From: Marsupella aquatica
Lineage: Eukaryota; Plantae; Marchantiophyta
DNA: 64,000 nucleotides
Reading direction: 5' to 3'
NCBI GenBank assembly: GCA_973895155.1
Contig: OZ316897.1
Span: 4,000,211-4,064,210 of the forward strand
In this document: one piece after another, positions 32,701-50,717 of the stretch
Layout: each line of letters opens with the position of its first letter
Numbering within the stretch: position 1 is the first letter of the stretch
Translations under genes and position numbers: made by a program
Notes under the pieces: model-generated
The model's input: the letters and a program-made list of their open reading frames with translations, nothing else
The model's database searches: none
What the model was told of the DNA's origin: nothing

Positions 32701-34486
32701 TCTTCATGAGACAGCCACTAGGCTTTATGAAGAAGGGCCAAGAGAACTTAGTTTGCAGATTGCTCGAGTCCTTGTATGGATTGAAATAGTCTCCCAGACA
32801 ATGGAACAAACAGTTTGATGATTTCATGCTTGCTCGAGGTTTTACAAGGATGGTGTATGATCCTTGTGTGTATACAAAATCAGTCAAGAATGATGTATTT
32901 GGTTTCATCATTCTGGTGATCTATGTGGAAGACATGCTGATTGTGGCTAAAGATCAATCTGAGGTTGACAATCTCTAGGCAAAATTGAGTGTTGAATTCA
33001 GGATGAAGGATCTTGATAAGGCCAAGAGGATCTTAGGGATGGAGATTTTTAGGAACTCTGATACTGGACAGTTGTGCTTGAGTCAAGGCCAGTATGCGAG
33101 GAAAGTACTTGCACAATTCAACATGGAGAACTACAAGCCAGTGAGTATTCCTTTAGCTTCACATTTCAAGTTATCATCGGCTTTCTCTCCTACGGATGCT
33201 GTGGAAAAAGGTCTGATGGCTAAGATTCCTTATGAGAAGGCAGTAGGCAGTCTGATGTATTTGATGACTTGTACTAGGCCTGGCTTGGCCCTAGCGATGG
33301 GCAAGGTTAGCAGATTCATGTCAAATCCAGGGAAGGTACATTGGGAAGCTGTGAAGTGGATTCTCAGGTATCTGAAGGGAACACATGATTATGGATTATT
33401 ATTTGATAACAAATCAAATAGAACGTTAGTTGGCTATGTAGATTCTGACTATGGAGGCTGTCTGGATACAAGGAGGTCTACAACTGGGTTTGTATACACT
33501 TTTGGAGGAGGATGTATCAGTTGGAAATCTATCTTGCAGAAGTGCATATCTCAGTCTACTACAGAAGCAGAGTATGTTGCAGTAGCAGAAGCAGCAAAGG
33601 AAGCAATTTGGTTCGACAAGTTGATTGCGGAGATGGGTTTAGAGCATGGCAAAATGACTCTAAATTGTGATAGTCAAAGTGCTCTTCACTTGGCTGCTAA
33701 CCAGGTGATGGATAGCAGGGTGAAGCACATTGATATCAGGTACCATTTTATTAGGCAAGCAGTGTCTAATAAAACTTTTGAACTAGTCAAGATTGATGGA
33801 GCTCAATCCCGCTGATGCCTTTACCAAAGTGATTCATTTGGAGAGTTTCTCAAGACACCGTGCTACTTTGCAGGTTTTGCAGTTGTAGTGCAAGTAGAGT
33901 TATTTAGCAATGTGTGACTATTTGTATATGGATTACTCATTCCTGTTAGGCTACGGCTTAGTTCTAGTTAACCCTTAGTTAACCCTTGTGGTTTTTAGGG
34001 GGAGACCTGGTTTGGTGATTGTCTAGAATTTCCCGCTGAGGATTTCATATGGTAGCATTTAGTCTAGTCCCCAAGACAAGAGTCAAGGGGGAGTTTGTTA
34101 GATATTGCTCTAGTCTTGTGACTCATGAGCTAACCACAATTAGTCTAACTTGGGTTAGGACCTAGCTAATGTTAGCGATAGTGTTGGTGTGCATAATTAT
34201 AGCCAGGGCTGATGCTAGACCTTGGTGGAACTTAGGCTCATTGTTACGGAGCTAGTTGAGAGATAGGGAGATGTCGTGACATATAGTATCGTAGCCATAG
34301 TGTATCGAAAACATACAAGTCACCGACAAGGCATATGTGCAAGCTACTAGCAACCAACATGCATAGAAAAAGTCCAATCACATTCACAAGTGCCAAGAAA
34401 AAGCAAATGAAGTGATATGTACGTAGTGGAGGTGTAAACCTCTTTATCCCCCCCAGACCACAGCCAAAAGGAGGGCTGAAGAAAAT

Positions 34487-34768
34487 TCAGGTAGCACGTG
34501 GAGCACAGGAAGGGCAAAACCATAACCCTTCTGGCACCTGGATAAGTTCAAGCCGAAGGCAGAAAAGATGGTACCCTCCATTGCAATTGTCACACAACAG
34601 CATCTGGTCAGCATCATCAATTCGCAAACACACTTTGCAAGGGTAGTCCACAGGTGGAATCCAGGTAGAAGTCACAATGGTGGGATCCAGGTTAGGCAGA
34701 TGACAAGGGGCGCAATTCTTGGCATTGTCAGCAATTGTGCGCCCATCTGCCCCTTGTAACTCTAGCAC
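34487..34768 (-). pseudogene. C-terminal PHD finger of the element D polyprotein
   Basis: CKVCLRIDDADQMLLCDNCNGGYHLFCLRLELIQVPEGLWFCPSC is a C4HC3 pattern. Confidence 0.92.
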
Positions 34769-49139: not shown

Positions 49140-49560
49140 GGCCCTCTTAATGGCATGAGCCCCCCCCATAGGGCTTCGTGCCCCACCTTAAGAGCTTCCG
49201 AAGGGAAGCTACGAGCTCCCCCTCCCCTCCTTAATGAAATTGGGCCTCGTGCCCTGGTGACAGTGCTCCCGAAGAGGGAGTCGAGTGTACTCCCCCTCCT
49301 CCCTCTTTAATGCTGCTTTATGGGCTTTGTGCCCTGCAGAAGACTCCCGTGAGAGGAGTCGAATGTACTCCCCTCCCCTGCTTCAATGTTGCTTAGGGCC
49401 TTGTGCCCTCCTGGCACCCTTGCTCCCCCTCCTTCTTTAATGCAACATAGGGCTGCGTGCCCTCTCCTAACACTCGCTCCCCCTCCTTCCTGCTTTTGCT
49501 TGTACTTGGCTCCCCCCTGCCCCTGCTTTAATGCAGAATAGGGCCTCGTGCCCTCTCCAT
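49140..49560. repeat. Degenerate 55-80-bp repeats in the D leader
   Basis: Recurrent ctcccctcc...ttaatg...gggcYtYgtgccc, about 6 times. Confidence 0.7.
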
Positions 49561-50717
49561 GCTTATGCCTCAACTTAATCCCCCTTCCCTACTGTGTAAT
49601 TGCTGGCAACAGGCGAGGGAGGAAGAAAAACGCCGAAGGGAGGGTGCACGGCCCTATGCGCGACCCAGGGGCAATGATGAGCCCCGCATGTGTATACCCC
49701 TGGTCCAAGCTCGCGATGATAACTGCGAGGGAAGGCGAGAAGAAACGACGGCCGGGAAGAAAAATTGGGTGGCAGCAGGTCGCGACCGGAAAAAGATGAA
49801 AGAAAACGGACCCGTGGCTCTGTGCGCTCGGGAGGAAGTCGCGAGGTGATCGCGCGGTAGTCGAGGGAAACTCGCCGGCAGCCGTGGCCGGGAATGCAAA
49901 AATGACCCCAAAAGCAGTCGAGGCAGCAAGCGGCAGTGACAGTAAGAAGGAGCACATAGCAAAAGGGGTCACGAATGTAGCCGGGAACAAAGCACGGACT
50001 CAAATGGTGATGTTATGTGTATACTTATACACATAGCACCACATTAAAACCCATAACTCTTAACCCGCCATTCCTATGCTGCTCAAAGAAATTGCACCGG
50101 CTTCGACGGAAATTGTATGTACCGACCTAAGCAGCTGAGATGAGAATGTCTCCTATCTTCTTCCTCTCACCACAGAGTTCTTCTTGAATAAAAGGCGTGA
50201 TAGAAACAAGTGTACTGAAATCGAATCAAAAACCGGCGGGATGCCAAGATCGGCCGGGAGCATCTAACGAATCACTGTGTGAATCCCGTGTACGGAACCG
50301 ACGAGCACTGTCTGAGCTCTGTCGACAGCGATTCAAGAAGAACTGAAAACCCACAAAGAAAGACATGCCCTAAGTAAACAAAGTCTTGGCGTCACACTAA
50401 CAAGCGCGTTTGCTTCAAGAACGCCTGGCATTTGCTATAAGAACATGTCGCTAACTCAAGTCGTACACTAGCCCTAACTACATACCTAGCGGGCATGCGA
50501 GGGACATGCCGATGTGCATAAGAGGCACTGTCCCTTGGCATGACAGAGAGCTTGTGCTGTGGATGCTTGGTATGGCCGGTCGGCCTAGAGTGCAGTAAAG
50601 CTCTTGTGTGTTCCCGTGGACGTAGCTTCATGTGGAGGTGAACCACGTATCTCTGTGTGTCGACTATTGTGCGTTGGATGGTTCATGGGCTTGCCGTTGC
50701 GAATGTCGTCTATGCTC

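What the first reader, a model, noticed from the sequence alone, without database searches (positions are those of the whole stretch)
34272..50545. Element D has a complete gypsy gag-pol but apparently no LTRs: 10-bp imperfect termini and a 4-bp TSD
Seen: boundaries are unambiguous because the host LTR resumes exactly, with GAGA duplicated. The 5' end is TGTCATGCCA and the 3' end TGTCACGACA (8/10 match both as inverted and as direct repeat). Only ~215 bp follow the pol stop, including a PPT-like GGGGGGGATAAAGAGG (34439-34454, minus). I can find no copy of this 3' segment in the 5' 1.8 kb and no tRNA PBS. D is younger than A, whose LTRs are still ~96% identical, so divergence cannot have erased LTRs. 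Known: Ginger DNA transposons use a gypsy-like integrase with TIRs and 4-bp TSDs but lack RT. Inference: an LTR-less retroelement with an unusual end-regeneration mechanism, or an integrase-mobilised cut-and-paste form.
Basis: partly seen in the sequence, partly recalled or inferred. Interest (0 to 1): 0.85.

Follow-up and report, generated by a model that had tools for sequence, protein, structure and literature searches.

The report
One-repeat copy of split-repeat gypsy retrotransposon
Element D really has no LTRs, but it is not a new LTR-less kind of element: it is a broken liverwort copy of a known odd gypsy family (normally A-genes-B-A-B) that kept only one A and one B, a form found in about half of its relatives.

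Summary
D (34272-50545, minus strand) sits in a copia LTR between duplicated GAGA, starts TGTCATGCC, ends GTCACGACA, has about 215 bp after the pol stop, and has no terminal repeat. Of the 16.3 kb, 6.9 kb is a nested copia (37360-44242); D proper is 9,386 bp.

D belongs to the gypsy lineage with a DNA methyltransferase and a PHD finger. Its layout, A-genes-B-A-B, was noted in 2018 for Klebsormidium, and this scan reported it at least six times on other DNA of this genome.

- D's head aligns with A. Its tail is the polypurine tract plus one B, ending at the family's B end.
- In 83 related loci, about 16 copies have B-A-B and about 14-18 have a single B like D. At least six of the single-B copies have clean 4-bp duplications.
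- The two forms are mixed in the pol tree, so D-like copies arise repeatedly and are not a lineage of their own.
- D's closest relative (Calypogeia fissa) has B-A-B.

Either B1 x B2 recombination deleted the repeat after insertion, or a one-repeat DNA was integrated. My data cannot separate these.

The missing tRNA primer site is explained by a Tf1-like self-primer: a 13-nt inverted pair with compensatory changes between families.

The parts
34268..34271 (.). left copy of the 4-bp target-site duplication GAGA, in the host copia LTR
   Evidence: intact paralogous LTRs have one GAGA; empty-site loose ends
34272..34447 (-). repeat part B (176 bp), single copy; it ends ..GTCACGACA at 34272, which is the 3' terminus of D
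   Evidence: alignment A2: ends in the same column as B1/B2 of L001, L028 and L058 and as the single B of L002, L035 and L062
34448..34454 (-). polypurine tract core (G7) directly before B
   Evidence: a G run precedes B in nearly all relatives
34490..34768 (-). PHD finger at the C-terminal end of pol; the stop codon is at 34487-34489
   Evidence: Pfam PF00628, E 2.3e-12
35279..35890 (-). integrase (H2C2 zinc finger plus DDE core)
   Evidence: Pfam PF17921 and PF00665
35826..36266 (-). RNase H
   Evidence: Pfam PF17917
36367..37359 (-). reverse transcriptase; its N-terminal continuation lies beyond the nested copia, at 44248 onward
   Evidence: Pfam PF00078, E 1.9e-28; 80% identical to a Calypogeia fissa protein
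37360..44242 (+). nested copia element (not part of D), with 344-bp LTRs, duplication TTGCA at 37355-37359 and 44243-44247, and a tRNA-Met-type primer site
44248..45640 (-). C5 DNA methyltransferase domain between protease and RT; the core at about 44818-45390 is inverted in this copy
   Evidence: PF00145 hit on the + strand; D 5156-5728 matches L001 and L002 on the opposite strand
47292..48731 (-). gag with a CCHC zinc knuckle
   Evidence: ORFs; weak PF00098 hit
49167..49558 (-). tandem repeats in the 5' leader
   Evidence: (family D9)
50176..50188 (-). primer binding site of the self-priming type, directly after the end of A
   Evidence: exact 13-mer inverted pair, 0.01 expected by chance; it closes the predicted fold
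50332..50344 (-). probable 5' end of the transcript, complementary to the primer site
50190..50545 (-). repeat part A (about 356 bp), single copy; it begins TGTCATGC at 50545, which is the 5' terminus of D
   Evidence: alignment A1: homologous to A2 of L001, and the first 8 nt are invariant in all relatives
50546..50549 (.). right copy of the target-site duplication GAGA

Best explanation
D is a dead copy of a Ty3/gypsy retrotransposon of the methyltransferase/PHD lineage. It was inserted by the family's DDE integrase into a copia LTR and made a 4-bp duplication. Full copies of this lineage read A - genes - B - 2 nt - A - B. Here B plus A is the repeat that reverse transcription makes (U3-R-U5), and the integrase ends (TGT.. 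and ..ACA) lie back to back inside that repeat. D keeps only the outer A and one B, so it has no repeat at all. Shown: family membership, homology of the ends, the duplication, and recurrence of this form in relatives without forming a clade. Inferred, and taken as the conservative route: D went in as a full copy, and recombination or loop-out between the two identical 176-180-bp B copies, only about 300 bp apart, removed A2 plus one B. That leaves the termini and the duplication untouched. A copy in this state lacks the downstream A that supplies the 3' R, so it should not be able to replicate. Minus-strand synthesis in the family is probably primed by the transcript's own 5' end, as in Tf1, not by a tRNA.
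For: Domains gag-PR-DNMT-RT-RH-IN-PHD. Relatives have B1 at +56..+240 after pol, A2, then B2, and A1 8-9 kb upstream. The family termini and the internal ACA-NN-TGT junction are seen. 4-bp duplications occur in full copies (L052 AAAG, L058 TGTG) and in single-B copies (L002 CAAA, L035 CCAA, L050 CATG, L062 TTGA, L033 TGCA). D's head aligns to A and its tail to B. D's nearest relative L001 is a full copy, and the two forms are interspersed in the pol tree. Other deletions occur in the same region of relatives: L023 has a shortened A2 and L029 a truncated B2. All copies are old, with B1/B2 84-99% identical, which leaves time for deletion. Self-priming: exact 13-mer inverted pair, 91.9% pairing across 25 relatives against 37-62% when slid, two compensatory changes between D and the metagenome family, and the pair closes the fold in D and L002.
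Against: Nothing shows that D ever had A2-B2. Single-B copies are as common as full ones (about 14-18 against about 16). They are not older by terminal branch length (Mann-Whitney p = 1.0). The best preserved metagenome copy, L002, is a single-B copy. No B-A-B-A-B reciprocal product was seen. A repeat of only 180 bp is short for such frequent homologous deletion. The relatives are metagenome contigs, and an assembler could skip a B-A-B loop when the two B copies are near-identical.
Confidence: 0.5

Rival explanations
1. D was born this way. The integrase used the two internal end sites of an ordinary linear reverse transcript (B-NN-A genes B-NN-A), or the single site of a one-LTR circle. It therefore inserted A-genes-B directly. 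Such copies are dead on arrival, and about half of all insertions of the family are of this kind.
For: Any model with integrase sites inside the repeat predicts this product. Single-B copies with clean 4-bp duplications are about as frequent as full copies. They are not older and include the best preserved copy. No triple-B reciprocal products were seen. Retroviral integrases can cut a palindromic LTR-LTR junction internally (PMC1180852, PMC1905944).
Against: The final structure is identical to that of a B1 x B2 deletion, so nothing in D itself discriminates. The age proxies are weak (12 against 13 copies, all decayed). Cutting of such internal sites by a plant gypsy integrase has not been shown.
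Confidence: 0.4
2. D represents a separate, self-propagating LTR-less retroelement lineage, or an integrase-mobilised cut-and-paste form.
For: This copy has no repeats and only short imperfect terminal similarity. It has a 4-bp duplication, as Ginger elements do.
Against: Single-B copies are polyphyletic among full copies, and D pairs with a full copy. D has a polypurine tract, a primer site and RT/RNase H. Without a downstream A there is no 3' R for the first strand transfer. The ends are the family's A start and B end.
Confidence: 0.04
3. The missing A2-B2 is an assembly artefact: a B-A-B loop collapsed in the window's assembly.
For: Near-identical 180-bp repeats 300 bp apart can be skipped by graph assemblers. 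The contigs laid are too short to test this.
Against: D is old enough to carry a nested copia whose own LTRs have diverged 2.3%, so its two B copies would no longer be identical. The same form occurs in many independent contigs.
Confidence: 0.04

Closest known systems
KnitGypsy-Dnmt3 of Klebsormidium nitens (de Mendoza et al. 2018, PMC5890265)
   Same: A gypsy pol with a Dnmt3-type C5 methyltransferase inside the polyprotein. The Fig. 4c legend says the repeat structure is that of a DIRS element (A-coding-B-A-B) while the domains are typical of gypsy. D's relatives show exactly this layout.
   Different: D itself has only A...B. The host is a liverwort, not a charophyte alga. The passages I searched in the paper do not mention a PHD finger, a target duplication, self-priming or one-repeat copies.
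Solo-LTR formation in ordinary LTR retrotransposons
   Same: Loss of sequence between two direct repeats of one element, leaving the termini and the target duplication intact (general knowledge).
   Different: Here the recombining repeats would be the two B parts at the 3' end. The coding region is kept, and what results is a full-length element without repeats, not a solo repeat.
Integrase cleavage of the palindromic LTR-LTR junction of 2-LTR circles (foamy virus PMC1180852; HIV-1 PMC1905944)
   Same: Integrase ends lying back to back as a small palindrome (here ACA-NN-TGT) that would have to be cut internally.
   Different: In retroviruses the palindrome exists only in circles and linear DNA is the normal substrate. 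In this family the palindrome lies inside every repeat unit. No biochemistry exists for it.
Tf1/Sushi and plant Tcn1 gypsy elements (self-primed reverse transcription; PMC6317226)
   Same: No tRNA primer site. The start of the transcript is complementary to the sequence just after U5.
   Different: I did not test whether D belongs to that clade. It carries a PHD finger and no chromodomain was detected. Self-priming here is inferred from sequence only.
Ginger1/2 DNA transposons
   Different: D has gag, protease, RT, RNase H, a polypurine tract and a primer site, and no true terminal inverted repeats.
DIRS/Ngaro/PAT tyrosine-recombinase retroelements
   Same: The split direct repeat layout A-genes-B-A-B in the full family members.
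   Different: D and its relatives encode a DDE integrase, not a tyrosine recombinase, and they make target duplications.

Membership tests
Canonical Ty3/gypsy LTR retrotransposon | Domain order gag-PR-RT-RH-IN | tested here: met
   Pfam hits in that order on the minus strand, with a DNMT inserted between PR and RT
Canonical Ty3/gypsy LTR retrotransposon | Two long terminal direct repeats | tested here: not met
   No terminal repeat in D. Relatives have split repeats, not LTRs at both ends
Canonical Ty3/gypsy LTR retrotransposon | TG..CA termini and a short target duplication | tested here: met
   TGT...ACA ends and a GAGA duplication
Canonical Ty3/gypsy LTR retrotransposon | tRNA-complementary primer binding site | tested here: not met
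   No TGG-type site follows A. A 13-nt self-complementary pair is there instead. I did not scan against a tRNA set.
Split-repeat DNMT gypsy lineage (KnitGypsy-Dnmt3-like) | C5 methyltransferase inside pol | tested here: met
   PF00145. It is collinear in the relatives L001 and L002 and inverted in D
Split-repeat DNMT gypsy lineage (KnitGypsy-Dnmt3-like) | Repeat layout A-genes-B-A-B | tested here: not met
   D has A-genes-B only. The layout is present in about 16 relatives, including the nearest one, L001
Split-repeat DNMT gypsy lineage (KnitGypsy-Dnmt3-like) | Sequence relationship of pol and of the end segments to full members | tested here: met
   RT is 71-80% identical at protein level. 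The pol tree places D with L001.
Split-repeat DNMT gypsy lineage (KnitGypsy-Dnmt3-like) | DDE integrase with a C-terminal PHD finger | tested here: met
   for D; rve plus PHD in the genes of L001 and L002
Ginger DNA transposons | No reverse transcriptase; terminal inverted repeats | tested here: not met
   RT and RNase H are present. The termini match only 8/10 over 10 nt, and they are the family's A start and B end.
DIRS-like retroelements | Tyrosine recombinase and no target duplication | tested here: not met
   rve integrase; a 4-bp duplication in D and in 10 relatives
Tf1/Sushi-type self-priming elements | The transcript's 5' end is complementary to the primer site | tested here: met
   The transcript start itself was not mapped.
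Tf1/Sushi-type self-priming elements | Phylogenetic placement in the Tf1/Sushi/Tcn1 clade | not tested
   No reference sequences of that clade were compared

The most novel reading that the evidence does not exclude
One-repeat copies such as D are made at integration. The family's integrase acts on end sites that lie inside the repeat unit of the reverse transcript. An ordinary linear cDNA, or a one-LTR circle, then yields A-genes-B, and only a joined (two-repeat) form yields the replication-competent A-genes-B-A-B. On this reading about half of all insertions are dead on arrival. The two forms together, plus the absence of the mirror form A-B-A-genes-B, would constrain how a DDE integrase works from internal sites.
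Probability: 0.4. Interest if true: 0.7.

Novelty: new variant of a known kind. Interest (0 to 1): 0.5.

Why it matters
The split-repeat gypsy lineage is one of very few cases where a DDE integrase appears to use end sites buried inside the repeat made by reverse transcription. Its mechanism has not been worked out. This work shows that a second, repeat-free insertion form with intact target duplications is about as common as the full form, and that the mirror permutation is absent. That gives concrete constraints for any model and a simple readout for an assay: the ratio of the two forms among new insertions. It also warns annotators. LTR-based finders will miss both forms, and a full-length gypsy without LTRs in bryophyte genomes need not be a new class. 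The self-primer removes the puzzle of the missing tRNA site.

Tried and rejected
- A sensitive search for any terminal repeat in D (word size 7, 3' 400 bp against 5' 2 kb, plus whole-element self-BLAST) found nothing above chance.
- A search for other D copies in the window found none.
- I looked for close sister copies from the same genome. The best protein hit is only 80% identical. The metagenome scan gave relatives at 71-80%.
- The one read-laying run returned only short contigs. They confirm the empty copia site and show matches stopping at 34268-34274. They do not show what follows B in sister copies. The 559 loose ends not listed may hold the answer.
- The age comparison of single-B and full copies by terminal branch length and by ORF preservation showed no difference, so it is inconclusive.
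- A census of solo A-B units was abandoned, because the loci were chosen around RT genes and are biased.
- Within-family covariation of the self-primer helix is only modest (3 pairs changed on both sides; 54 of 500 shuffles reach this). The stronger evidence is the comparison between D and the metagenome family.
- An endogenous pararetrovirus was considered and rejected, because an integrase and a target duplication are present.
- The script machine was lost, so a shuffle-based score for the A and B alignments was not obtained. MAFFT alignments were used instead.
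Full report
**1. What is in the window**

D occupies 34272-50545 on the minus strand. On the left the host sequence ends ..GGGAGA. On the right it resumes GAGAGCTTGTG... Two uninterrupted LTRs of the same copia family in the window read ..GGGAGAGCTTGTG.. 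with one GAGA (family D6). The 4-bp duplication is therefore real. In four public runs, contigs that match the LTR up to 34271 continue with GCTTGTG.. (loose ends), which is the uninterrupted LTR of other copies of this copia.

Inside D lies a complete copia element, 37360-44242 on the plus strand.
- Its LTRs are 344 bp and 97.7% identical.
- Its duplication is 5 bp, TTGCA.
- It has a tRNA-Met-type primer site.

With that element and one TTGCA removed, D is 9,386 bp.

**2. Content of D**

Pfam finds, in this order on the minus strand:
- a CCHC gag;
- reverse transcriptase;
- RNase H;
- an H2C2 plus DDE integrase;
- a PHD finger at the very end of pol.

A C5 DNA methyltransferase lies between protease and RT. 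Its catalytic core scores on the plus strand, and D 5156-5728 (window about 44818-45390) matches two relatives in reverse orientation. The core is therefore inverted in this copy only. The reading frame is broken in many places, so D is a dead copy.

**3. No LTR**

Neither repeat finder nor BLAST of D against itself, nor the 3' 400 bp against the 5' 2 kb at word size 7, shows any terminal repeat. The only internal repeats are tandem units in the leader.

**4. Relatives**

Notes from this scan pointed to a gypsy lineage in the same genome that carries a methyltransferase and a PHD finger and reads A-genes-B-A-B. They also pointed to de Mendoza et al. 2018 (PMC5890265). The Fig. 4c legend of that paper says of KnitGypsy-Dnmt3 that the repeat structure is that of a DIRS element while the domains are typical of gypsy.

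I tested this independently.
- D's RT is 80% identical to a protein of the liverwort Calypogeia fissa (locus L001).
- A scan of metagenome contigs gave 80 more loci at 71-80% identity.
- Self-comparison of these loci and a census with A and B queries give the typical layout. After the pol end comes a G run, then B1 (about 180 bp), 2 nt, A2 (about 300 bp), then B2 directly abutting. A1 lies 8-9 kb upstream of the pol end.

**5. Family ends**

In full copies A begins TGTCATGC and B ends GTCACGACA. The internal B1-A2 junction is ACA, two extra bases, TGT (TA in L058; GC in L028, L052 and L001). A2 and B2 abut without extra bases. Full copies have 4-bp duplications (L052 AAAG, L058 TGTG).

D's termini and its 4-bp duplication are therefore exactly those of the family. 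MAFFT alignments show two things.
- D's first ~356 bp are homologous to A, most clearly to A2 of L001.
- D's last 176 bp, directly after the G7 run, are homologous to B and end in the same column as B in all relatives.

D is A-genes-B.

**6. D's form is common and recurrent**

In many loci the B-end motif at about +230 to +245 after pol is not followed by an A start and there is no second B. Where the 5' end is also on the contig, the 4 bases before A equal the 4 bases after B:
- L002: CAAA
- L035: CCAA
- L050 and its ortholog L072: CATG
- L062: TTGA
- L033: TGCA
- L061: GGTG against AGTG

After merging contigs of the same place, I count about 16 full copies and about 14-18 single-B copies. 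No copy has a B or a B-A upstream of the genes. The mirror permutation A-B-A-genes-B is therefore absent: 0 against 6 full copies with both ends visible.

**7. Not a lineage**

A FastTree of the RT-to-PHD DNA from 36 loci plus D mixes the two forms throughout. L009 is sister to L010, L016 is sister to L029, and L002 lies next to L007. D itself pairs with L001, which is a full copy. Single-B copies thus arise again and again from full-copy lineages.

This fits the expected replication. The downstream A supplies the 3' copy of R, so an A-genes-B copy should give a transcript that cannot make the first strand transfer. That last point is inference.

**8. How the form arises**

Two routes give the same structure.

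(a) Deletion after a normal insertion, by recombination or loop-out between B1 and B2. These are identical at insertion and only about 300 bp apart.
- This is the generic process behind solo LTRs.
- Other deletions are seen in this region (L023, L029).
- All copies are old, with B1/B2 84-99% identical.

(b) Integration of a one-repeat DNA.
- The ends that the integrase uses lie inside the repeat unit B-NN-A.
- An ordinary linear reverse transcript therefore carries one such site in each LTR, and a one-LTR circle carries one.
- Using them yields A-genes-B directly.
- Retroviral integrases can cut the palindromic junction of two-LTR circles internally (PMC1180852, PMC1905944).

Several results lean toward (b).
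- Single-B copies are as frequent as full ones.
- Their terminal branches are not longer (p = 1.0).
- The best preserved metagenome copy is a single-B copy.
- No B-A-B-A-B product was seen.

All of these are weak, and nothing in D itself discriminates. I give deletion 0.5 and birth at integration 0.4.

One caveat applies. The relatives come from metagenome assemblies, which could skip a loop between near-identical B copies. The divergence of B1 and B2 in full copies of similar age makes this unlikely as a general explanation.

**9. The missing tRNA primer site**

Directly after the end of A, D has a 13-mer at 50176-50188 on the minus strand. Its exact reverse complement lies 143 nt upstream, at 50332-50344. 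These are the only two occurrences in the window, with 0.01 expected by chance.

The metagenome relatives have a different 15-mer pair at the same two places.
- Across 25 distinct sequences 91.9% of cells pair, against 37-62% when the partner is slid.
- L058, L040 and L051 show changes on both sides.
- Between D and that family, two positions differ on both sides and remain paired.
- In D the core is not a palindrome, so the relation is complementarity and not a shared motif.
- The pair closes the minimum-energy and centroid folds in D and in L002.
- In the metagenome family a TATAAAAGG box lies about 30 nt upstream of the 5' partner.

This is the signature of Tf1-type self-priming, which has been predicted for the moss and club-moss Tcn1 gypsy clade (PMC6317226). 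It implies that the transcript starts inside A. A then holds part of U3 plus R and U5, and B is the start of U3 next to the polypurine tract.

**10. Comparison and verdict**

D is a member by descent of the split-repeat methyltransferase/PHD gypsy lineage, but it lacks that lineage's defining repeat layout.
- It is not a Ginger-like DNA transposon, because RT, RNase H and a polypurine tract are present.
- It is not a DIRS element, because it has a DDE integrase and a target duplication.
- It is not a pararetrovirus, because it has an integrase.

The scan has reported the family layout at least six times on other DNA of this genome. None of the notes I retrieved mentions the one-repeat form, its frequency, the absence of the mirror form, or the self-primer.

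It does add usable constraints on an unexplained integration mechanism.

Noticed in passing
window 44818-45390: The methyltransferase core of D (motifs IV to VIII) is inverted relative to the collinear arrangement in L001 and L002, so pol cannot be read through.
   Followed up: partly
window 37360-44242: A nested copia of the same family as the host element. It has 344-bp LTRs (97.7% identical), a 5-bp duplication TTGCA, a tRNA-Met-type primer site and a polypurine tract. The same genome thus shows 5-bp duplications for copia and 4-bp duplications for this gypsy family.
   Followed up: yes
window 50176-50188 and 50332-50344; L002 4552-4700: A Tf1-like self-primer: the presumed transcript start is complementary to the site just after A, with compensatory differences between D and the metagenome family.
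   Followed up: yes
L002, L028, L035, L058 and others, about 30 nt upstream of the 5' partner of the self-primer: A conserved TATAAAAGG box inside A in the metagenome family. D and L001 have a degenerate version at that place.
   Followed up: no
all loci with 5' coverage: No copy has B or B-A upstream of the genes. The mirror permutation, which a random single cut of a two-LTR circle would give, is absent (0 against 6 full copies with both ends visible). No model I could write down explains this asymmetry.
   Followed up: partly
L001 3805-4381: A solo A-B unit in reverse orientation, 99% identical to the A2-B2 of the full copy 9 kb downstream in Calypogeia fissa. Its flanks and duplication were not examined.
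   Followed up: no
B ends in L002, L028, L035, L058 and others; D 34272-34300; L033 13092: In most relatives B ends with two tandem 15-nt units that each end in GTCACGACA. D and L033 end after a single unit, and B2 of L007 has lost one. The number of end motifs varies.
   Followed up: no
L002 1-1186 and 14690-15866: A 1.19-kb direct repeat (88.8% identical) flanks the region that holds the single-B copy. These may be LTRs of a larger element in which the copy is nested.
   Followed up: no
window 49167-49558: Tandem repeats of about 75-90 bp in D's 5' leader. Several relatives also have tandem repeats in the leader, which explains the variable distance from A1 to gag.
   Followed up: no
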